Shown in pieces: positions 16,538-63,399 of a stretch of 64,000 nt of DNA. Both the position numbers and the translations under genes were made by a program. The notes beneath the pieces are model-generated. The model was not told the origin of the DNA. It saw nothing but the letters and a program-made list of their open reading frames with translations, and ran no database searches. The stretch's first letter is position 1. Each line of letters begins with the position of its first letter. This DNA is from Euprymna scolopes (taxonomy: Eukaryota), in the NCBI GenBank assembly GCA_053919585.1, contig CM132792.1; one strand, given 5' to 3'.

Positions 16538-16852
16538 TGTAGTACTTACCAACAAAACAAACACCCACGTGTGTGTGCCTTGTATAGGCATGCGCGACAA
16601 CAAAACTTGGGTTTTCATAAGCGTAAGTCTCGAGGTTGTCAGGAATCTACAGGCGCGTGCACAAGAGAAGGGATTGAGATAGTGGAATAAAAGGCAGGTC
16701 GAGTGAGAAGGTTGTTGTTGTTGTCATTGGACGTTACAGTGATGCGTGCGTTAGCAGGTGATTAAGAGGCTGGTCTTTTTTTGTGTGTCAAGTCGCGCAC
16801 CTCGGTGGAGATCATATAAGTCGTGCACCTCGGTGAAGGTGAAGGTCATAAA
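16538..16852 (+). repeat. 5' LTR
   Basis: Starts TGTAGTAC; roughly 93% identical to 19881-20196 by manual count; has a ~28-bp tandem duplication near its 3' end. Confidence 0.95.
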
Positions 16853-16862
16853 CTATTTCGGC
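16853..16862 (+). promoter_or_regulatory. Non-canonical primer-binding site, complementary to tRNA-Phe nt 1-10
   Basis: CTATTTCGGC directly after the LTR is the reverse complement of GCCGAAATAG. Confidence 0.6.
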
Positions 16863-16893
16863 TATTTCGTTTTGTCTCTTTTCCTGGACAACT

Positions 16894-17323
16894 ATGGCTG
16901 GGGCAAAGTTTGATTTAAAACTGATACCCGAATTCAACGGATCCACTTCTGTTGTCGACTGGGTCGAAAGGGTTGAGCTGACCTGCAACCTCTGTGAAGT
17001 AAAGGGGGTGCATACCGTGATTCCCCTGAGATTGGCTGGAGGCACCCTAAGTGTATATCAGCAACTTAGTGCCGTGGAGAAGGCTGATATTACCTGTATA
17101 AAAAATGCTTTATACAAGGCATTTGCCATGGATCCCTGCACGGCCTACGAAACATTTGCCTCTAGGAAGCTCATGCCAGGTGAAACCGTGGACGTCTTCT
17201 TCGCGGAGCTGAAGAAACTTGCAGTTCTATTTGGCAATGGAGTGTCAGAGCAAACACTGGCGTATGCGTTTGTGGCCGGCCTTCCCACCCGTGTTAAGCA
17301 ACTGTTGAGGGCTTCCACGATGT
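16894..17323 (+). pseudogene. gag: Gag (capsid region), C-terminally truncated
   Basis: MAGAKFDLKLIPEFNG..IPLRLAGG..ETVDVFFAELKKLA..FVAGLP..LLRAS; homologous to the gag at 48235. Confidence 0.85.
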
Positions 17324-19883
17324 TTGGAAACCCCAGTGTGTGCTGCAGTTCACATTGATCGGCCTGATTTTAAGGTGGACTACGACCCTCACCAAAAAGC
17401 ATGGACTGCATCGTGGAAGTGGACAGAAGGAAGGGCGCCAACCGAACTCAAGAATAGCATTGCAGAGTACTCGGTACCCGACAAGGCCCGTAATGAATAC
17501 GAGAAGGAACTTGATGCATGGATCCAGGATGGATGGCTGATCCCCTACCCCAACAAGCTGGGACCACCCAAGGGTCTGATTCCCTTAATGGCGGTAGTCC
17601 AGTATAACAAATCAAAAGTTCGTCCGGTGCTGGACTATCGTGAACTCAATAGATACATTGAGACGTACACTGCCGATGCTGACGTGTGCGCCAGCAAGCT
17701 GAGAGAATGGCGCCAGAAGGGCTCCAATGTGTCTATAGTAGACTTGCGGAAGGCTTATTTGCCGGTGCGAGTGGATGAGACATTGTGGCCGTTCCAGACA
17801 GTGTGGTTCCGGGGTCAGAGATACTGCCTTACTCGACTTGGCTTTGGGCTGAATGTGGCACCGCAAATCATGAAGACCATCGTAAATGCAGTGTTGTCCC
17901 AGGAAAAGACCACTGAGGACGCAACATCGGAATATATTGACGATGTGTACGTCAAGAAAGACGTACAATCTGCGTCGCACGTCAGAGAAGAGTTAGCTCA
18001 ATTCGGGTTGGAGTGCAAGGGTCCCGAACGTCTGAGGGATGGAGCACGGGTATTAGTATTGGACGTTTGCGGGAAAGACGGTACCTTACGATGGAGGCGT
18101 GGCAGTGAGTGATGTTATTACGCGGCGGACTATTTTTTCCTTGTGTGGGAAACTTATTGGTCACTTACCAGCGTGTGGCTGGCTTCGAGCAGCTGTGGGC
18201 GTCATCAAACGCAGGGCAAGTTTAGTAACTACAGGTTGGGATTATGTATCTGATGATGCTCTTCTAAATCTGATGACGACAGACACCCTAGAGAGAGTTA
18301 ACAAGGAGGACCCTGCCCGTGGAGAATGGTGTGTCGATGGGGACACTGTGAATGTTTGGGTTGACGCTAGTTGGGAGTGTTATTGGAGCAACGTGGAAAT
18401 GTAATTAAAGACGCGTGCTGGCTGCGACCCGTGAATTATGCTCAACACATCAATCTGGCGGAACTGGATGCTGTTATGAAGGGTTTAAATATGGCACTGC
18501 AATGGCAGTCAAAGAAGTTACACTTGTACACGGATTCTCTCTGCGTCTACCACTGGGTGTCCGACACTCTTTCGGGACGAACGAGAGTCCGCACTTAGGC
18601 AGACAGTGAGATGTTAATTCGGCGGAGGCTAAACACCCTGAAGAGTCTGGTATCAGAGTATGACCTGTCAGTGAGTGTAACGCTCGTGGCATCACACTGT
18701 AATCGTGCAGACCAACTAACCCGTGTGCCTCACAAATGGTATGAAGCTGTGAAGACAGGCGTGGAGTTCGCTGCTCGATCTTGCGCAGTTGGCGCGATTA
18801 GCTCATGCCAAATACAAAGAATTCATGTGCAGAGTGGATATCCAGGTATCAAAAGAACTTTGTATTTTGCGAGGCGTGTGGACCCGGCAGTGACAAGGGC
18901 GGATGTCAGGCAGATCATCACGCACTGTGAGGCATGCCAGTCTATCGATCCTGCACCTGAGCAATGGCAGAAGGGGCGATTGGAAGTTGAGCATGTGTGG
19001 CAACGATTAGCGATGGATATTACCCATTACAGTGGTAAGCCCTTTCTAACCCTTATCGACTGTGGACCTACTCGTTTTGCGGTGTGGCGGCAAATGACCA
19101 GGCAGGACTCGGCGAATGTTGTCCGCCAACTGTCATCTATCTTTTCTGGGCGAGGTGCGCCGGAAGAGATATTGACGGACAACGATGCTGTTTTTTGTAG
19201 CCACCAAGTTCGGCAGTTGTTGAATGAGTGGGGTGTCCGACTACGACTGCGATGTGCTCATGTGACATCAGGGAATGGCATTGCTGAGAGGAGCCATCGT
19301 AGCATCAAGAGAATTGCTGCCAGACAGCAATGCACCGTTACGGAGGCCACGTATTGGTATAACATCACACCAAAGGATGGGAAGACACTAACAACAGCAC
19401 CGGCCAATGCCATACACAAATACCGTGTTAGGATAAAGGGCATTGACACTGTCAAACCAATCGACGAGGACAGTCATGACAAATACAAGGTAGGGGATCC
19501 AGTTTGGGTTAGAACCCCTGGAAACCGGTGCACCGCCAAGTTCAAGCGAGGACGAATATCTGGAGTGGTCAGCCAGCAGTCGGTCATTGTTGATGGAACC
19601 CCATGTGCGCGATCTTCGCCCAGCTAGTGAAGTACATCCCACAACTACAGAGAGCGATGAATCATCAAATAATGACCTGCTGATGAGTGAGGTCACCGAG
19701 CAAGAGAGTGGTAGTTGTAGTTCGTCTGATCAGGCAGGATCAGAAACAGAACCAGAACCACACCCAGAACCAGAACCAGAACCTGAATCCGAGATTCTAA
19801 ATACCACCCTTCGCAGAAGCCAACGAACTAAGAGGCCACCTCCGGAGTGCACTCTATGTGATCATCAGATCAGGGGGGAGTGT
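17324..19883 (+). pseudogene. pol: Pol (RT, RNase H, integrase) with frameshifts and stops
   Basis: RT: RPVLDYRELN, VDLRKAY, LGFGLNVAP, YIDD. RNase H: WVDAS, INLAELDA, YTDS. Integrase: H..YPG..CEAC, MDITH, TDND, NGIAER. Confidence 0.95.
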
Positions 19884-20196
19884 AGTACTTACAAACAAAA
19901 CAAACGCCAACGTGTTTGTGTCTTGTATAGTCATGCGCGACAACAAAACTTGGGTTTTTATAAGCGGAAGTCTCGAGGTTGTCAGGAATCTACAGGCGCA
20001 TGCGCAAGAGAAGGGATTGAGATAGTACTATAAAAGGCAGGTCGAGTGAGAAGGTTGTTGTTGTTGTCATTGGACGTTACAGTGACGAGCGCGTTAGCAG
20101 GTGATTAAGAGGCTGTTTTTTTGTGTGTGTGTCAAGTCGCGCACCTCGGTGAAGATCATATAAGTCGTGCACCTCTGTGAAGGTGAAGGTCATACA
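19881..20196 (+). repeat. 3' LTR
   Basis: TGT...ATACA following the PPT; TATAAAAG at ~20029. Confidence 0.95.
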
Positions 20197-29978: not shown

Positions 29979-31000
29979 TATCAAGTTGACAAGAAAGTTA
30001 TTGCGGTTTTTATCTTTTAAATCCAGATGAACATATCTCGGCTTAAGCAAAAATCTAGTTGAGATTAATTAGCTAAAAGTTTTTTTTTTTATATTGCTTT
30101 TATTTTTTAAGCATTTCTCACGCAGAATATTGTCGAGACTCTTAAAAAGTGGGAGTCGGTAGTTCAGAAGTCGAGAGATTATGGAGGATGAGACAGAGTT
30201 TTGTGACCGTTGTGCACATCTGCATGGTCGGTTTGGAAATGTGTGGAGGAGACTTAGGTTTTTTAGTTGACTAATGCCGGGTGTTGTTGTGGAAATTTTT
30301 GATGCATTTTGTCTATTTGTTGAGAGTACTTTAATGCCGTAATTGTTTCACCTGTATTCAAAATATAATAATGGTTAAGACATGTTTCAGACCATAAAAC
30401 AGTCAACATCAACTTTTCTTACTGCAATTCTGGCTCCAGTAAGAGTTGTTTAGTTTCGTCTGCATCTAACCTAAGAGCTGTGTCGCCAGATGTCGTAAAA
30501 AAGAAACACTTTTCATCGCAAATCAGAATTTCACTTAGAAACGGTCGTTTCTTTTGCGTAAAAGAAAGGAAAATGAGATTTAATAACGGCGTTCATTTGG
30601 TTGTCATTCAATTTGTTAGGCACTTATTTATCAAGTTTTTGTCCATCAAATCACTCTCAAGCGGTAGCATAGTGGGTTACGTTACGTCTAATTAAGAGGC
30701 AAGTTCTCGAACAGTTATGCGTGGATCTGCTTCCACCAAAGCTTTTACTTAATCGTTGTCACCACGATTGGCGACCTATAGGTTCATCATCTTCAGGACT
30801 CTCGTTGCCACCAGGAAATGTCTTACAATTCTATTGTACTGTGCGTTCAGTAGTGGTTCCTGAACCAAACGCTTCGTTTATATCGCGAGCTATTTCAGCA
30901 AATTTTTAATCAACCAATATCTTCCATGCAACATACAATAAAAACGCAAAAGGATGCTGTAATAATTGTAATAACTAAGAATATATAATTAAAACAATAG
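29979..31000 (-). mobile_element. Decayed mariner transposon
   Basis: TA followed by TIR-like TCAAGTTGACAAGAAAGTTATTGCGGTTTT; minus-strand AEIARDINEAFGSGTT.ERT and KKLDK*VPNKLNDNQ. Confidence 0.8.
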
Positions 31001-43645: not shown

Positions 43646-44626
43646 AAAATTTTCGACCTATTATTTCGAAACAGCTCCACAGACCCACCACCTATGGTTT
43701 GCTATGTTTAGAAAATTATGCTGGCGAAGCTGAGGAAGAAGGGCCGAAAAAACTGTTTTCTGGACCAAATCTTTTTTTTAAATCCTCCGAATGCACTTAT
43801 GGGCATATTATGATTATTGAGATTGCATTTTTTAAAAAAAATTATGTGAGTGAACAGATGAAAACTGTAAAAGTTATCAAATGCATAATTATTGACGGCA
43901 TCGAAAACTACGACATTATTTTGTTTATTAAAGTACGATATGAAGCGAGTCAGTTACGTTTAAATGTGTAGTTACTCTATGAGTCTACTTTCTACTGAGG
44001 TAGAATAAAAAATGTATTGATTCCTTAGTCCTTTGCTTGGTATGTATATTAAAGTAAACCGATAGTCATAACAAAATATCAACCAGATAAGAACGTTCCT
44101 TTAAGGAGAAATCTATGAGCATCTCTTCGAAATTCCAATTTGAAACATAGTTAGGGATGCCATCTTTCATTCTCTACTAATATTTCACTGCTTTATGTTT
44201 ATTTTCTTAAGATATGTTGTAGTGAACTTCAATCAATGTCCCTTCATTAAAATATCCAAACACGTCTTGCTAATAACATTTTAAATACTTATTCCTTATT
44301 TCTGTGTTTACTTAAAATTAAATTGAATTCCTATGAGTAGAAGTGTTCTCGAAATATTTACCCGAATGTGGAACACAATGATATCGGTTTGTTCCCCAGC
44401 TTATAACTATTTACTCATGTTAAAGTTCAAGATTGTCAAATCATTGTTGTACTTGCTTACAACTATTATTACTAGTACTCACGTGGTTTCCTCACTACTT
44501 ATTTCACAAACTCATTAACCCTTATTCTCAAAAGTGATTTTGGCCTCAATTAACAATGACTCTTTATTATTGAAATAAACGAGATTTTACAACAAATAAA
44601 AAGGTTAAGACATATCTCATAGACAG

Positions 44627-44756
44627 TGTATCAGAAGTCTTTGTCTAACGCAACATCTGCCATCTTGGCCTCTTTTATTCTTTTTCTGTCTTTCAGCCTG
44701 CTGCCGAGACAGATTCTCGCCCGTTTCTGAGGTACGTCCACTCTATGCTTATCACA
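44627..44756 (-). repeat. 3' LTR with ~240-bp internal deletion
   Basis: Both ends match the 5' LTR; the junction falls at CAACA. Confidence 0.9.
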
Positions 44757-47538
44757 CTCCATCCTGATCTCATGATCACAGAAATGGCAATGGGTTGGTA
44801 ATCGCCGTCGCTGGGTGCTTTACCGAAAGGGAACCATGCATGCCTCTTCTTCGCTTAAGCTCTAGTCCGCGGACTGGAGGTTGAAGAATACTGCTTCCGC
44901 TTGGAGGCTACTGATATCAGAGTTATATTCTGAGTGAACTGATGTGAACCAGAGCGATGTATCACTGGTCCCTTCCTTGGAGTCAAACTCGCCCCTGTTG
45001 TTCACGGGTAGCCGCGATTGTGTTATCGGCCGTAGTCCTTAATGTGACGGAAGCACACCGTCGACACACTGCTTGCTTGCTGATCACTTCAGTGATTGCC
45101 CAAGTCCATACTAAGTAGAACATTTATGTCGCGGGTTTTGATCAACACAACACCCCCTTTTGGGGTCACGTTGTATAAATAAACTGCTTTAGACACCGCA
45201 CAGCCCGTTCTGCCGGCGATAGTCTTGACATTCCTGGTGTTCCGCTCAATAATCCCATTCCTTTAGGTACGTAGGCACATCGAAACCGCAGATGTACTCC
45301 TCAGCCATCGATAAACTTTCTGAATTGTTCACTGTTGAAAGCGGTACCGTTGTCAGTTAGTATCTCCGTTGGGGGGCCACGTTCGAGAAAGATGCCGTTT
45401 AGCTGACGGATTACTGCTGCCGGTGGAGCGGAAACCATATCGCAAACCAATATGGGCCGCATTCAATGAACGTTAGGTAATCCTCGGAGTTGGAGTGAGT
45501 AACATCTATCGCCAGTCGGCTTCAGTGGCTCTTTGCGTCCAGTTTTCCTTTTCCCCAGCGAACGGATGCCGGGTCAATGGATTGGCAAGGCACACAGCTG
45601 TCAACCACTCTTTTAACGTCTGCTTTTCGTACTTCAGGGTCATCCAGCTTATCAAAATACAAGGTTCGCTTGATCCCTGGATGTCCACTTTGGTGGTGGA
45701 CTTCATTGATTCAACCACACTGAGCAGAACACGGGGCTGCGGTGCAGGCCGGTTATATGGGTTCGATGGTTCTAGTGGTGTCAATCCATCTGCGGTGAAC
45801 TCTTGTTAAACAATCAGCCTTGTTCAGGTTGGATCTACCCAGTGAGATTTCCATTAACAGCGTATACTCTTTTTTATCCTCATGGGGGTATCGAACCGCC
45901 GTCGGATGAGCATCTCGCTCGTAGCTTTAGATCGTACTCTGGCTCTCCCCGTAAGGGTGTTCGAAATCCACTTGTCGACGCAAGCAGAATCTATAAACAG
46001 CCGAAGGGTAGTCGACTTCCAGAGGATCGCCAAGTTTTTCCCCTTGATGACGGCATCAAGCTCTGCCAGGTTTATATGCCGGGAGTCCCGTTCTGGGCGA
46101 AACTAGCAGGCATCTTCCACCACAGCTCCATCATGGACTATAGATACGGCCGCGGAAAGAGAGCTCGCTTCACCCCCACACTAAGGTCCCGGCTGTCGAC
46201 GCACTATCTGCCCCATGCAGGGTCCTCCTTGCGCACTCTGGTGAGGACTTCCTCCAGCATTGTGTTGAGAAGGGAATCGTGTACCACATCGTCCCATCCA
46301 GTGGGGCACTCAGACGCTCTCCTCTTTATGAACGCCACCGCAACACGGAGCCAGCCGCCCACAGGGAGGCGTCCAATCAATTTTGTGGTCAAGAAAATAC
46401 GTTTCTTCGTGTGACATCGTGGGGGATGTCTGAGACTTCATTTATCCGTTTCCAATGCAGGACGCTGTCTTCTCCCCAGACCTGTAAACCGATCACCCGT
46501 GCGCCATCATTTAGTCTCTCCAGCTCCTGACTGAGAAGTCCAAAGTTGCGAAGATTCTCCTCTACACGCGTCGCGGATACACCCCCTTCATTCACGTACA
46601 CTATATGCAGATTTTGCCTGCCTTATGCGCTCATCCTGAGCAAGAATGGCGTCAACGATCATTAGCCTAATTGATGGCGCCACGTTGAGTTCTAACCCCA
46701 TACGGGTTAAGCAGTATCTTTTCCCTTTAACCAGAACTGTCTGATAATAGATAGTGACTGGTGTACACGCACTTGAAGGTACGCCTTCCGAAGATCAAGC
46801 ACTCACACATTAGACTCTGTTACCGCCATTCCCATAATTTATCAGTACAAACGTCTGCGCGGGCCGTAAAGGAGTCCACTTGCTTGTTTAACTCCCTATA
46901 ATCGAGCACCGGCCTTACTTTTTGTTTTTTGGCTGGACGATTGCCATTAGTGGGATTAAACACTGGAGGCCCAATGCCTTCTCAAGATAAGGAACCAGTC
47001 ATCCATTGTCGATCCAGGTCTGTAGATCCGTATCATACTCTACGCGAGCTCCGGGGGAAATCTTGTACTCTGACACTCTACTGAACAAATTCTCTGGCGG
47101 TTGCTCGTCTGACCACTTCCAAGCCATAGTCAAGGACTTCGTGCACTGATGAAACTCCGCACGGAAATCAGAATTATCTAGGATGAGTGCCGCGCAAATG
47201 CACTCTTCGCGTTGGGAGAACATCACGTTCCCGGCTCCATTTATTACGACTCCGCCCAGCTGAACAATTGCGCCCATTCCTAGGAGTACATCGTAACCGA
47301 GTAGTTCCCTGTCCATAATCAGAGCTTGCACGGCTACTTCAGACCCGCTTCCGATGATAATGTGGATGCCACCTTCTCCGTAAGAGAACAACGAGCTCCC
47401 ACCTACAGTTAGCACCGGAGTTCTCGTCGTTTTCCAAGTGTCGCAACGTTATTTGCGCACAAGTGTCCACAAGCGCAAGGCATCTACACCCATTAACGCG
47501 TACGCTCACCGCAGATAGAGCCTTGTTTAATGACGAAC

Positions 47539-47584
47539 TGGGGAGAAGACTGGCGCTCTAACTTCCTTCCCCATCCCGTTTCCC
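47539..47584 (-). promoter_or_regulatory. Putative -1 ribosomal frameshift signal (gag-pol)
   Basis: In-frame G GGA AAC followed by stem TGGGGAAGGA..TCTTCTCCCCA; the protease lies in the -1 frame. Confidence 0.75.
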
Positions 47585-48247
47585 GGACAAGCGCGAACCA
47601 AGTGTCCCCGATTTGTGCATTTGTGACACTGCGGTCCGCAAGGCTTCAAGGTCGTGACCGCAACAAAAGGCAATCACAGGCCCACTGGTTTCGACCGCCG
47701 CATCTGAAGCAGTTAACACTTCTGGTGTTCTCGCTAGGTGTAGGCAGTGGAGTAGGTGCACATGCGGCCTCTCAAGGTTGAACTGTGGTGACGACCTCCT
47801 CACCTCTCGTATCCATCAGCACGGCACGAGCCCTCTCTAGCAGCTCTTTCAATGACAGCTCGTCCATTCGGGTTGAGGCTCGCAAAAGTCTCTTTGCATC
47901 GCATGGCAATCCATTTACGAAGGCTCCCTTTATCCAACACCATGGTGACATTTCACCTACCAGGCGTGGTAGCCGCTGACAACCCGTCAAAAACTCATCT
48001 ACGGTCTTCCCTGGCCGAAGGCGGAAGACAGTCAACTGCTCCAATGCCGTAAACGAATCCGTCCCGTAAGCCTTTAGAAGGGCACGCTTTATTTCCTCGC
48101 ACTACTCGCTCCACCTTGGTTACCTCGCACAGCTCACACTAACTCTACAGCCTCTAGCCATTCTACTATTAGAACGTCCGTCGCTGCGCCACTAAACTCG
48201 GGGATGAGTCGGAGGTCAAACTGTCTTATAACCATGATTAGAATACA

Positions 48248-48259
48248 ACCGGAATAGCT
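48248..48259 (-). promoter_or_regulatory. Non-canonical primer-binding site, complementary to tRNA-Phe nt 1-12
   Basis: AGCTATTCCGGT immediately after the LTR end ATACA pairs with GCCGAAAUAGCU with one mismatch and one G-U pair. Confidence 0.55.
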
Positions 48260-48632
48260 TGTATGAGAAGTCTTCGTCTAAAGCAAAGCAACACAACTTT
48301 TTTGTTAAAACGTCAATCAGAGGTTCGCTAGTCGCAAGTTGAGTCGAGTAGAGTTCGCTGTTCACACCACTAGATACACGTCGACGTTCTCTATTCGCAT
48401 GTCTTAAAGGATTCTCCCACTCCTCCCAGCAACTCGCCTTTTATAATGTTTCGGGCACACCCACTTTGCATATACCACACGAGACTGCTCGAGATCTACG
48501 CGTGACCGGAGGCTTTAAAAGACAACAGCTGCCACCTTAGCCTCTTTTTTTTCTTCTTTTGATGTCTTTCAGCCTGCTGCCGAGACAGATTCTCGCCCGT
48601 TTCTGAGGTAGGTCCTCTCTATGTCTAACACA
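48260..48632 (-). repeat. 5' LTR (373 bp)
   Basis: TGTG..TATAAAAGG..ATACA; homologous to 44627-44756. Confidence 0.92.
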
Positions 48633-50094
48633 GACAGATAACTAGAAATATAACATTGCCAATTTACAAAGTTTATGATATTGTGCCTTATATACAACAT
48701 TGTAACTCGTTCTGAAAAGACTCACTGTTTTTTAACACAAAGCATATTTGAATACGAGTAATATATTCACCCTCTAATCGATGAAAGTGTACACAGTATA
48801 TGCACCCTTGTTCTCGTGTGTGATCAGGTATAGATAAAATGCTCAAGCGCTGATGTACTTCATTGGATATTTAATTAATATATACAACATGGGCCATTTA
48901 TGTCCAGGGTGAGGGTGATGCAAAGAATTTAACATGGAAACGGTCATGTGAGAAGTTGCGAAAGAATGAGACACCGAAAATTGATAGATGTATTGATCGC
49001 GTTAAATTATGCTACATTGTAAATTGTCGCCTTACCCACACTTGGATTCTTGATTAAAACACGATAAATAATAAAATAAAAGCATCTGTTTACCGTAATG
49101 TTTACTAGTCTAACGACAGAAAGTCTTATAATTTCATCTCCTGATTTTGATTGGATTAGAAGAAAAACAGAAGAATCCTTGCCATAGATGCAAACAATCA
49201 AAGGAAAATAGATAACGAAATACATTTTATGTTTTTTCTATCATTTAATAAATTGTCTTAAAAGTGGTATGTTATTACAACGAGGATGCACTGTGCTTTC
49301 GTCTTTGTGGAGAAATAAGAGAATTGAAGGATAAGCTCTTATTGTATTTGAATTTTTCCATATTCAGTTTTTTTTTATTACTATTAAAAGTTACATCAAG
49401 TTTTCCAAGCTTTCCACTTGATCAAATCGATCAACTGGTTTCGAATCAATCGGGAAATTAAAAACTGGAAGACTAAAATACGTATATTACTTTTGATCGA
49501 ATAAAAGGCATGCTTCGAAAGCAAAACAAAGCTGTCAGTATGTGTCAAATCAACAGAGATTAGAGTAATCCCTTTCAACCATATTGACTAGATTTGCTAT
49601 AATTCAAGAATCGTAATAAAAAACAACCAATACATTTCTAACCGGAATAAAAGTTTGTGATTGTTTATTTATATTCCTTTCTCGAAAGGTAATATTTTTG
49701 ATCCGATGGTAATAGCAAATTGCGTGCTCCTTAATAAGTAGGGCCGTTGACTGCATCGATTTCGAATAGATGAAACGAATCTTTTGTAAAATTCCCAATC
49801 GAATATCCAGCCAGCGCAAAAGAAATTGGCAAAATACGGATTAGAGTAAAAATAATATATGATTAATTAGTAAACATGATCGAATCGCTTAATGTTATTC
49901 AACATCGATTAATGTTATTGAACACTTGCACAAACCATAGCCACTTCATAATCTGTTTTTATATCAATTTACACGCACAGCTGTGCACCATCACATAATT
50001 CGTTCAATGTGTCATTTATACTCTATTTTTCCCAGTCTAGCTTCAAACTAACTCTAACGCAGCAAATACTTATATTAACCCTTACCTTGAACAA

Positions 50095-61647: not shown

Positions 61648-63399
61648 TTAGGTTGGTGCAAAAACCATTTCGTTTTCTCACATATGTTATTTTTATATAT
61701 AATTTCTGAATTCATTGAAATATATAGTCATTATATATAACTTAAAAGCACGCTTTTCGCTCTATTTAATCGTCTTATTCATTTCCGTTCTCAATGTCCT
61801 TATTCATTTTGTTGCAGGCTTTTCGACAGCATAGACAAAATTCAAATCGGCACGATTTTCCTTTTCCAGTTCAAACTACTCCGAAAAGTTTTTATTTACA
61901 TGGGTATCATCACTTATCAAGGCCAAAAGGCCACTGAGGATAAGGGTTAAAGAGTGTACAGAAGAAATTGGACAATACAGTAATCGTTAGTAATGGAAAT
62001 TCGATAAATTTGGTAAATGATATGGAACGGCTCATCAAAAACTTGTTTGCGTTAGACTTGAAGACAACCATATTGTAGTCAGCTGGAAAGCAGAAAAACT
62101 GGAGACAATTCCATAGGCGTGCTATTCTAAAAATAAGTTTTGCTCATGGAATCTACGTTTAGGTTTAGGCACAGATAAAGAGTGAGGGAAATTATTGATA
62201 GTGTTTCTTGCTAGACGGGTGTTTTTTGTGAAAGTTTGGCGAGGGGGGCATATTTTGGAGCTCAGCCGAGCACTTGCCATGAAAGTAACGATAAAGCAGA
62301 GACAAACTCGCAACATATTTTATGTGAGAGGTTGCAGGGAAGAGAAAAGGGCATCCCCTACGAGGCTATGAAGTCTATTTTGAACTCTATCAAGTTGCCG
62401 AGATAGATCGTGATATCCATGATACGTTTGGCCCAGGAACTCCTAATGAACGTGTATCACAAATGTTGTTCAAGAAATTTTGCAATTGTGACGAGAGCCT
62501 CGACGATGAAGACGCTCGCAGCCGGCTTACTGCGGTTGATAACGAACATTTGCAAGCCTTAGTTGTAGTCGATCCTCGCAAAACTACACGAGAATCTGCA
62601 ATGTAAGTCGACGTCGACCAGTCAATAGTTGTTCGCCATTTAAAGCAAATGAGAAAGTTAAAATAGTTGGATAAATGGGTGCCGCATAAATTGAACGATA
62701 ATCGAAAAATCGTCGTTTGGAGATGTCTTCTACGCTCCTTCTGCGCAATAAAAACGATCCATTTCTCGAGAAGATTCTGTCGTGTGGTAAGAAGTGAAAC
62801 CGGCGATGTTCGGAACAGTGGTTGGATGTCGGAGCTCCACAACACTTTCCAAGGTCGAATTTGCACCAAAAAAAGTTTATGGTAGCTGTTTGGTGGTATG
62901 CGGCCGGTTTCCTCAATCACAGCGTTTTCAATCTGGGCAAAACGATTACGACGGAGAAATACTGCCGACAAACTGACGTAATGCACCAGAAACTCCAACG
63001 TATGTGCACGGGATAAGACAATATGTACGAACGAATTCTCTTTCATGCCGACGCTTGCCCACATGTTTCTTAACTGATCATGCAGAACCTCCACGAATGG
63101 AGCTACGAGACTCTGACTCATCCGCTATATCTACCGGACCTCTCGCCCAACGATTATCACTTTTTCAAGCATCTCGTCATCTTCCTGCACGAAAAATGTT
63201 CAAAAGCCAAGACGATGACGAATCGGCCTTCAATGATTTCATCGCTTCCAGAACCTCGGGATAAATAAACTTGTTTCTCGTTGGCAAGAATGTTTCGATT
63301 CTAATGGTTCTTATTTCGATGAATACAGTTTCTTGTTAAAGGAGTGATGATCTTTTGAAGTTGAACGTAAAATAGGACATTAGTCTTGCACCAACCAAA
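61648..63399 (+). mobile_element. Full-length decayed mariner (Hsmar1-like TIR) interrupted by a CR1
   Basis: TA|TTAGGTTGGTGCAAAA..TTGCACCAACC; transposase DKIQIGTIFLFQFKL, DKWVPHKL, KKFMVAVWW, HPLYLPDLSPNDYHFFKHL. Confidence 0.95.
61891..62391 (-). mobile_element. CR1-like 3' fragment (family A) inserted in the mariner
   Basis: Family-A C-terminus and 3' UTR; AAGTT duplicated at 61886-61890 and 62392-62396. Confidence 0.9.

What the first reader, a model, noticed from the sequence alone, without database searches (positions are those of the whole stretch)
48248..48259. Second, divergent LTR element keeps the same anti-tRNA-5'-end motif at the same position
Seen: this element's LTR shows no obvious alignment to that of the 16538 element beyond the termini and TATA, yet ATACA is immediately followed by AGCTATTCCGGT. 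This pairs with tRNA-Phe nt 1-12 with one mismatch and one G-U; tRNA-Lys GCCCGGAUAGCU is a slightly weaker alternative. Only ~24 nt separate the LTR from the gag ATG, leaving no room for another PBS. Inference: conservation of CTATTYCGG between otherwise diverged leaders points to function and places the primer 3' end at tRNA nt 10-12.
Basis: partly seen in the sequence, partly recalled or inferred. Interest (0 to 1): 0.8.

Follow-up and report, generated by a model that had tools for sequence, protein, structure and literature searches.

The report
Retroelement primer site pairing tRNA-Phe start
A dead copy of a second, very different family of retrovirus-like jumping genes has, exactly where DNA copying must start, a 12-base site that pairs with the first 12 bases of phenylalanine tRNA rather than a tRNA tail. 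I could not find this way of starting reverse transcription described.

Summary
On the minus strand, AGCTATTCCGGT (48259-48248) directly follows the 5' LTR, whose ends are fixed by a CTGTC target duplication. The gag ATG lies 24 nt further on.

The window copy is degenerate. Among 29 other copies of this old family, 15 read AGCTATTTCGGC, the exact complement of host tRNA-Phe(GAA) nt 1-12. The other family in the window (16538) reads the same in 27 of 29 copies, although gag is only 39% identical and the LTRs do not align.

Relatives in a barnacle, two decapods, two trichinellid nematodes and three unidentified assemblies keep AGCTAT-NNN-GGC against the LTR end. Only tRNA positions 4-6 vary. 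Three of the four variant triplets occur in eukaryote-type tRNA-Phe genes in environmental DNA, but I could not read those hosts' own tRNAs.

Self-priming is excluded, because the LTRs hold no complement of the site.

Most likely the first 12 nt of tRNA-Phe prime minus-strand synthesis, perhaps after cleavage of the annealed tRNA as in Tf1.

I found no published description, though only open-access text was searchable. The scan reported the same site before on other DNA of this genome and on this window's first element.

The parts
48248..48259 (-). Primer-binding site of element 2. This copy reads AGCTATTCCGGT. Most sister copies read AGCTATTTCGGC, the complement of tRNA-Phe nt 1-12.
48260..48632 (-). 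5' LTR of element 2 (TGTGTTAG...CTCATACA, 373 nt). It has a TATA-like box near 48449-48442.
48633..48637 (-). Target-site duplication CTGTC, upstream copy.
48237..48247 (-). Rest of the leader (GTATTCTAATC; the T at 48247 completes TGTAT). In this family TGTAT is an inverted copy of the LTR's terminal ATACA.
44771..48236 (-). Degenerate internal region in the order gag (CCHC knuckles), protease, RT, RNase H, integrase. It has many stops and frameshifts.
44757..44770 (-). Polypurine-tract-like AGATCAGGATGGAG, directly before the 3' LTR.
   Evidence: compare (AGATCAGGGGGGAG)
44627..44756 (-). 3' LTR of element 2, 130 nt. It carries an internal deletion of about 243 nt and is about 90% identical to the 5' LTR where the two align.
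44622..44626 (-). Target-site duplication CTGTC, downstream copy.
16851..16862 (+). Primer-binding site of element 1 (the other family). This copy reads AACTATTTCGGC; 27 of 29 sister copies read AGCTATTTCGGC.
16538..20194 (+). Element 1, with LTRs at 16538-16850 and 19881-20194. It is the comparison family.

Best explanation
The 12-mer is the minus-strand primer-binding site of an LTR retrotransposon with the gene order gag, protease, RT, RNase H, integrase. It pairs with nucleotides 1-12 of cytoplasmic tRNA-Phe, that is the 5' strand of the acceptor stem, nt 8-9 and the first three bases of the D stem.

Inferred steps:
- The gag protein, which has two CCHC knuckles, helps to unwind the tRNA and anneal it.
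- A 3'-OH is made after U12. I think this most likely happens by cleavage of the annealed tRNA at the end of the duplex by the element's own RNase H, as Tf1 does with the first 11 nt of its own RNA. A host-made 5' fragment is the alternative.
- RT extends the primer into U5.
- Plus-strand strong-stop DNA later copies the 12-nt primer and runs off the tRNA's 5' end, which regenerates a PBS of exactly 12 nt.

Because the PBS is re-copied from the primer in each cycle, it follows the host's tRNA-Phe.

Shown: the position, the exact complementarity in this host, the conservation, and the absence of self-complementarity. Inferred: that priming happens at all, how the 3' end is made, and the re-copying.
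For: 1. Geometry. The sequence that abuts U5 is the place where the primer must sit. Here it abuts the LTR with boundaries fixed by target duplications, both in the window and in a young barnacle copy with 98-99% identical LTRs and the duplication GGCAA.

2. Exact 12/12 complement of host tRNA-Phe(GAA) nt 1-12:
- 15 of 29 copies of family 2.
- 27 of 29 copies of family 1.
- The 15-mer ACA+AGCTATTTCGGC occurs 3,214 times genome-wide, against 0 for the reversed control.

3. Conservation while everything around it diverges. Gag identity between the two families is 39%, the LTRs are unalignable at z = 1.5, and the leaders differ.

4. Relatives keep AGCTAT-NNN-GGC against the inferred LTR end; only tRNA nt 4-6 vary:
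- Barnacle and one sequencing-run contig: TTT.
- Two decapods: CTA.
- Trichuris: CGA.
- Trichinella: CGC.
- Two unidentified assemblies: TCC.
 Eukaryote-type tRNA-Phe(GAA) genes beginning GCCGAA, GCCUAG, GCCUCG and GCCGCG all exist in environmental DNA.

5. The two decapod elements share the same variant although their gag proteins are only 54% identical.

6. In family 2 a T/C polymorphism at the base facing tRNA A5 stands at 30:10 genome-wide, against 325:4 in family 1. It does not follow the LTR tree. This is what partial re-copying of a mismatched PBS from the primer would give.

7. The 12-bp duplex has -18.7 kcal/mol. From established knowledge, Tf1's primer pairing is 11 bp, a comparable length.
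Against: - There is no direct evidence of priming: no cDNA ends and no particle-associated RNA.
- A 12-nt 5' tRNA fragment is shorter than the usual 5' tRNA fragments, and the nuclease that would make the 3'-OH is unknown.
- I could not read the tRNA-Phe genes of the decapod, nematode and barnacle hosts, so host-by-host matching at nt 4-6 is not shown.
- The TCC variant implies a tRNA starting GCCGGA. In 120 environmental loci that start appeared only once, and as tRNA-Thr, not tRNA-Phe. This host has no tRNA-like sequence with that start.
- LTR ends in most relatives are inferred from the preceding CA, not from a second LTR.
- The LTR tree is star-like and poorly resolved, so the polymorphism argument is weak.
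Confidence: 0.7

Rival explanations
1. The site does bind the 5' end of tRNA-Phe or a 5' tRNA-Phe fragment, but for another purpose such as packaging, control of gag translation 24 nt downstream, or recognition by host small RNAs. Priming would then use something not yet seen.
For: Complementarity alone shows pairing potential, not priming. The site lies close to the gag start in family 2.
Against: - The sequence touching U5 has to be the primer site for the LTR to be regenerated, and nothing else lies between the LTR and the 12-mer.
- The distance to the ATG varies from about 3 to about 90 nt among relatives, which argues against a translational role.
- An element would not conserve a target for its own silencing.
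Confidence: 0.1
2. The primer is another host RNA that ends in, or is cut to, GCCGAAAUAGCU. Candidates are a transcript of one of the hundreds of tRNA-Phe gene copies or pseudogenes, or a tRNA-derived repeat, rather than mature tRNA-Phe.
For: The host has 695 matches to the tRNA-Phe 5' 15-mer, and in 3 of 6 sampled loci ARAGORN called no tRNA.
Against: The same logic holds in hosts with small genomes such as Trichuris and Trichinella. There the variants also look like tRNA-Phe starts.
Confidence: 0.08
3. Tf1-type self-priming: the 5' end of the element's own transcript folds back on the site.
For: The site is 12 nt long, close to the 11 nt of Tf1. Earlier notes of this scan report self-complementary PBSs in other families of this genome.
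Against: - The longest exact complement of the site plus 7 nt in its own LTR is 6 nt in family 2 and under 5 nt in family 1.
- The conserved GCGAATAG in the LTR gives at most six pairs.
Confidence: 0.03
4. Chance, or a relic: an antisense tRNA fragment captured once and carried along without function.
For: The window copy alone (2 mismatches) is within chance expectation.
Against: - An exact 12-mer sits at a fixed position in two families and thousands of copies.
- It is kept across phyla while the flanks are unalignable, and changes are confined to three positions.
Confidence: 0.02

Closest known systems
Canonical tRNA-primed LTR elements and retroviruses (HIV-1 with tRNA-Lys3, Ty1 with initiator tRNA-Met, Ty3)
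   Same: A host tRNA pairs with a site that abuts U5, a CCHC nucleocapsid is present, and the PBS is regenerated by copying the primer.
   Different: Those sites start with TGG and pair with 8-18 nt of the tRNA 3' end including CCA, so the natural 3'-OH is used. Here the partner is nt 1-12 of the tRNA and a new 3'-OH must be made.
Half-tRNA primers: copia and 1731 (Drosophila), Ty5 (yeast), Tca2 (Candida). From established knowledge; PMC5445492 also cites a PBS complementary to an internal tRNA region.
   Same: The primer is a 5' piece of a tRNA produced by cleavage, not the intact 3' end.
   Different: Those sites pair with the anticodon stem-loop (about nt 25-39) of initiator tRNA-Met or tRNA-Arg, and the fragment is about 39 nt long. 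Here pairing is with the extreme 5' end, the fragment would be 12 nt, the tRNA is Phe, and the elements are not Ty1/copia.
Tf1/sushi self-priming (Schizosaccharomyces pombe Tf1; summarised in PMC5445492)
   Same: The first 11-12 nt of an RNA pair with the PBS, and the 3'-OH is made by cutting at the end of a short RNA duplex. The 5' end of the primer gives a run-off stop.
   Different: In Tf1 the RNA is the element's own transcript. Here the LTR has no complement and the partner is a host tRNA.
Odin retrotransposons and lokiretroviruses (PMC9040795)
   Same: Both are retrovirus-like pol genes. Here an extra domain (DUF7047) lies between RT and an RNase H of the RVT_3 type, and the best solved-structure matches are retroviral RT and integrase.
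   Different: Kinship was not tested by phylogeny. That paper reports Odin only in sea anemones, and its text does not mention a PBS or tRNA.

Membership tests
LTR retrotransposon, gypsy-type gene order | Two LTRs flanked by a short target-site duplication | tested here: met
   LTRs at 48632-48260 and 44756-44627, with CTGTC on both sides. The barnacle relative has the duplication GGCAA.
LTR retrotransposon, gypsy-type gene order | Gag with CCHC knuckles, then protease, RT, RNase H, integrase, with integrase last | tested here: met
   The Pfam families RVT_1, DUF7047, RVT_3, Integrase_H2C2 and rve match in that order on element 1 and on the Trichuris pol. The zf-CCHC family matches gag. Element 2 itself is too broken for a Pfam scan but follows the same order by eye.
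LTR retrotransposon, gypsy-type gene order | Ty3/gypsy-type RNase H domain (Pfam RT_RNaseH, PF17917/PF17919) | tested here: not met
   This domain is absent from nearly all homologues; RVT_3 and DUF7047 are found instead. I therefore assign no named clade.
BEL/Pao | Pao-type peptidase (Peptidase_A17) and the accompanying DUF1759/DUF5641 domains | tested here: not met
   None appear in the Pfam scans or in the precomputed domains of 120 homologues.
Ty1/copia | Integrase upstream of RT | tested here: not met
   Integrase follows RNase H.
Canonical 3'-end tRNA primer site | TGG plus the complement of a tRNA 3' end, within a few bases of U5 | tested here: not met
   The bases after the LTR are AGCTAT... 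in all nine elements. The only nearby TGG is the ATGG of the gag start, at a variable distance.
copia/Ty5-type half-tRNA primer site | Complement of the anticodon stem-loop region of a tRNA | tested here: not met
   The complement maps to tRNA-Phe nt 1-12. I did not test it against the full host tRNA set.
Tf1-type self-priming | PBS complementary to the first bases of the element's own transcript (R region) | tested here: not met
   The longest complement in the LTR is at most 6 nt. The transcript start itself was not mapped.
tRNA-Phe 5'-end primed lineage (this scan's working group) | A 12-mer AGCTAT-NNN-GGC abutting the 5' LTR, equal to the complement of the host's tRNA-Phe nt 1-12 | tested here: met
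   Met for this host. For other hosts only the motif is shown; the host tRNAs could not be read.

The most novel reading that the evidence does not exclude
A metazoan-wide, retrovirus-like lineage of LTR elements, found in molluscs, barnacles, decapods and trichinellid nematodes, starts reverse transcription from the first 12 nt of tRNA-Phe. The primer would be released by RNase-H-type cleavage of the annealed tRNA at nt 12/13. This would be a third way of using a tRNA as primer, mechanistically a cross between copia and Tf1. Re-copying of the primer would explain both the host-specific changes at nt 4-6 and the unlinked T/C polymorphism in family 2.
Probability: 0.45. Interest if true: 0.85.

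Novelty: new variant of a known kind. Interest (0 to 1): 0.72.

Why it matters
Three ways of starting minus-strand synthesis are textbook knowledge for LTR elements: the tRNA 3' end, an internal cut in a tRNA, and self-priming. A primer taken from the extreme 5' end of a tRNA would add a fourth.

- It would explain why standard annotation tools, which look for tRNA 3' ends, fail to find a PBS in thousands of invertebrate elements.
- It points to a nuclease step that could be studied with recombinant protein.
- It gives a simple marker (AGCTAT-NNN-GGC after the LTR) for an abundant lineage whose pol looks closer to retroviruses than to Ty3.
- This particular finding adds that a second family, with only 39% gag identity to the first, keeps the same site. 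That is independent support for function.

Tried and rejected
- Self-priming was rejected: the LTRs hold no complement of the site.
- A host tRNA fitting the window copy's own variant was sought with two patterns and not found.
- tRNA-Lys was rejected as partner. Against the majority motif it gives one mismatch and two wobbles, against none for tRNA-Phe.
- A hairpin presenting the site in a loop (ATACA/TGTAT in family 2) is not conserved in relatives, so I dropped it.
- Three other near-matches to the 12-mer lie in the window. The two I looked at, 30888 and 62397, sit in an unrelated repeat with no LTR end before them; 43743 was not examined.
- Reading the tRNA genes of other hosts failed in every way I tried:
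  - No tRNA lies in the fetched loci.
  - Searching the full text for the three variant tRNA starts found nothing.
  - The host genomes are outside the searchable collection.
  - Run names are coded.
- Three look-ups of family-2 relatives returned no DNA.
- Literature searches for a 5'-end tRNA PBS found nothing relevant. Subscription papers are not covered, so the absence of a description is not proven.
- The two protein-atlas searches did not settle the superfamily.

Full report
**What is at the coordinates**

The finding lies on the minus strand. Window 48248-48259 reads AGCTATTCCGGT on that strand and directly follows ...CTCATACA.

Element 2 spans 44627-48632.
- Its 5' LTR is 48632-48260 (373 nt, TGTGTTAG...CATACA).
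- Its 3' LTR is 44756-44627. It is only 130 nt long because of an internal deletion of about 243 nt, and is about 90% identical to the 5' LTR where the two align.
- Both ends are flanked by CTGTC, a 5-bp target duplication. The LTR boundary is therefore fixed, and the 12-mer begins at the first base after it.
- A purine-rich tract, AGATCAGGATGGAG, precedes the 3' LTR.
- Twenty-four bases after the LTR an ATG opens a frame reading MVIRQFDLRLIPEF. This is the conserved start of this lineage's gag.
- The interior runs gag (CCHC), protease, RT, RNase H, integrase, but is full of stops. It is an old, dead copy.

The host genome is 5.9 Gb. Earlier notes of this scan call it a mollusc. I did not verify the species.
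- Host tRNA-Phe(GAA) genes begin GCCGAAATAGCTCAG. There are 695 matches, many of them in tandem arrays.
The duplex energy is -12.8 kcal/mol.
- The LTRs of the two families in the window do not align: z = 1.5 against shuffles.
- One detail differs for the 16538 element. Its LTR ends ...GGTCATA, not ...ACA, because most 3' LTR matches elsewhere in the genome stop at that base. Its own copy reads AACTATTTCGGC.
- Taken alone, a 12-mer with two mismatches is not beyond chance in 64 kb: 5 were found and 3.4 expected. The case therefore rests on position and on the other copies.

**The other copies**

I compared copies and tallied the 12-mer instead.

Family 2 has at least 747 candidate copies, 87-91% identical to the window copy. 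I read 29 other copies.
- 15 have ACA + AGCTATTTCGGC + TGTATTCTAATC + ATG. This is the exact complement of tRNA-Phe nt 1-12.
- Most departures are CpG decay (TCAG, TTGG, CCAG, CTGG) or a C in place of T at the base facing tRNA A5.

Family 1 is younger, at 96-98% identity with at least 2,126 candidates.
- 27 of 29 other copies have ...GGTCATA + AGCTATTTCGGC.

Genome-wide, the 15-mer ACA+AGCTATTTCGGC occurs 3,214 times, against 0 for the reversed control. Family 2 accounts for only about 30 of these. Many further families in this genome therefore share the site.

No host sequence fits the window copy's CCGG variant as a tRNA start.

**Relatives elsewhere**

The gag proteins of the two families are 39% identical. 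Gag and pol homologues occur in these hosts:
- Macrobrachium rosenbergii
- Petrolisthes manimaculis
- Amphibalanus amphitrite
- Trichuris suis and T. muris
- Trichinella species
- many unnamed assemblies

The DNA next to gag reads as follows.

| Host or source | LTR end | 12-mer |
|---|---|---|
| Barnacle | CTACA | AGCTATTTCGGC |
| Sequencing-run contig related to family 2 (48% gag identity) | CACA | AGCTATTTCGGC |
| Macrobrachium | TTCA | AGCTATCTAGGC |
| Petrolisthes | CACA | AGCTATCTAGGC |
| Trichuris suis | AACA | AGCTATCGAGGC |
| Trichinella murrelli | CACA | AGCTATCGCGGC |
| Two unidentified ENA assemblies | ACA | AGCTATTCCGGC |

- The barnacle copy is a young insertion with LTRs 98-99% identical. 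It has the duplication GGCAA and the same purine tract as family 1, so the 12-mer abuts a fully defined LTR there too.
- In all nine elements only the three bases facing tRNA nt 4-6 differ. The flanks on both sides are unrelated.
- The two decapod elements share their variant although their gag proteins are only 54% identical.

**Are the variants tRNA-Phe starts?**

I could not read those hosts' tRNA genes. As a weaker test I scanned metagenome contigs for GCC-NNN-ATAGCTCAGTTGGGAGAGC and typed the hits with ARAGORN.
- tRNA-Phe(GAA) genes exist with GAA (19), GCG (25), TCG (3) and TAG (1). By my own knowledge of Drosophila tRNA-Phe, the TAG gene's anticodon and T arms look arthropod-like; this was not tested here.
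- GGA was seen once, as a tRNA-Thr.
- Three of the four non-mollusc variants are thus known tRNA-Phe starts somewhere in nature. Matching host by host remains to be done.

**Mechanism**

The sequence that touches U5 is where the primer sits, because the end of the minus-strand primer defines the LTR edge. That rules out a hidden site further downstream.
- The only nearby TGG is the ATGG of the gag start, at distances from about 3 to about 90 nt.
- Self-priming in the manner of Tf1 is ruled out. The LTRs contain no complement of the site longer than 6 nt.

The remaining reading is pairing with tRNA-Phe nt 1-12, a 12-bp duplex of -18.7 kcal/mol. Complementarity ends sharply at nt 12 in every element, since the preceding base is the LTR's terminal A facing tRNA C13.

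I infer the following.
- A 3'-OH is produced after U12. Most likely the annealed tRNA is cleaved at the duplex end by the element's RNase H, by analogy with Tf1 (established knowledge; summarised in PMC5445492). Otherwise a host nuclease makes the cut.
- The tRNA's 5' end gives plus-strand strong-stop synthesis a natural run-off. That would explain why the site is exactly 12 nt long.

One further observation fits re-copying of the site from the primer.
- In family 2 the base facing A5 is T in 30 and C in 10 exact 21-mers genome-wide. In family 1 the figures are 325 and 4.
- The C copies are scattered over the LTR tree: 9 changes, against 8.4 in shuffles.
- A source element with a mismatched C would yield both kinds of progeny.
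- The tree is poorly resolved, so this is only a hint.

**Classification**

- Pfam finds RVT_1, DUF7047, RVT_3 (RNase H), Integrase_H2C2 and rve, and in some homologues retroviral-type aspartic protease families.
- There is no Pao peptidase and almost never a Ty3-type RNase H domain.
- The best solved-structure matches by sequence are retroviral: MMTV integrase, foamy-virus and HIV RT.
- I file it as an LTR retrotransposon with gypsy-type gene order and a retrovirus-like pol, and assign no named clade.
- A link to Odin elements (PMC9040795) is a lead only. That paper does not mention a PBS.

**Novelty and earlier notes**

- Searches of the open-access library for a primer site matching a tRNA 5' end, for the motif itself and for DUF7047 found no description.
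- The only papers holding the host's 12-mer use it as a probe against tRNA-Phe.
- Subscription literature is not covered.
- This scan has reported the same site several times on other parts of this genome and on this window's first element. I re-tested the core claims myself.
- New here:
  - the fully bounded barnacle copy;
  - the tRNA-Phe variant survey;
  - the T/C polymorphism.

**Verdict**

The site is very probably a working primer-binding site for the 5' end of tRNA-Phe. How the primer's 3' end is made is unknown.

Noticed in passing
family 2 copies genome-wide: The PBS base facing tRNA A5 is polymorphic: T in 30 and C in 10 exact 21-mers, against 325 and 4 in family 1. The C copies are not clustered on the LTR tree. 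This may be a trace of the PBS being re-copied from the primer.
   Followed up: partly
L072:3828-6824; window 17324-19627: Pol has DUF7047 between RT and an RVT_3-type RNase H. Its best solved-structure matches are retroviral RT and integrase. This may be a dual-RNase-H, retrovirus-like lineage (compare Odin elements, PMC9040795).
   Followed up: partly
one search hit list: The RT-RNase H region is 56-76% identical between whipworm, decapod and barnacle elements. That is high for such distant hosts, and horizontal spread is possible.
   Followed up: no
G000 contigs C18 and C28: tRNA-Phe genes stand in long tandem arrays, with a 219-bp period on C28. There are 695 matches to the 5' 15-mer in all. 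In 3 of 6 sampled loci ARAGORN called no tRNA, so some are probably pseudogenes.
   Followed up: no
window 30840-30910 (+) and 62390-62450 (-): Two near-matches to the 12-mer lie in two copies of an unrelated repeat that resemble each other. By eye it looks like the N-terminal coding part of a mariner-type transposase on the opposite strand. There is no LTR context, so these are chance matches.
   Followed up: partly
window 44627-44756: The 3' LTR of element 2 has lost about 243 nt, between short GTTG/TTTG repeats.
   Followed up: partly
window 19866-19880; L198:6835-6850: The purine tract AGATCAGGGGGGAG before the 3' LTR is identical in mollusc family 1 and the barnacle element. The pol C-terminus just before it ends with a conserved C..CDHQIRGEC-like motif.
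   Followed up: no
L072:3001-3060: The annotated start codon of the Trichuris suis gag gene model lies upstream of the primer site, inside the presumed U5. The deposited protein therefore probably starts too early.
   Followed up: no
window 16538-20194: The two LTRs of element 1 are only 92% identical, although its leader and gag start are 96-98% identical to sister copies.
   Followed up: no
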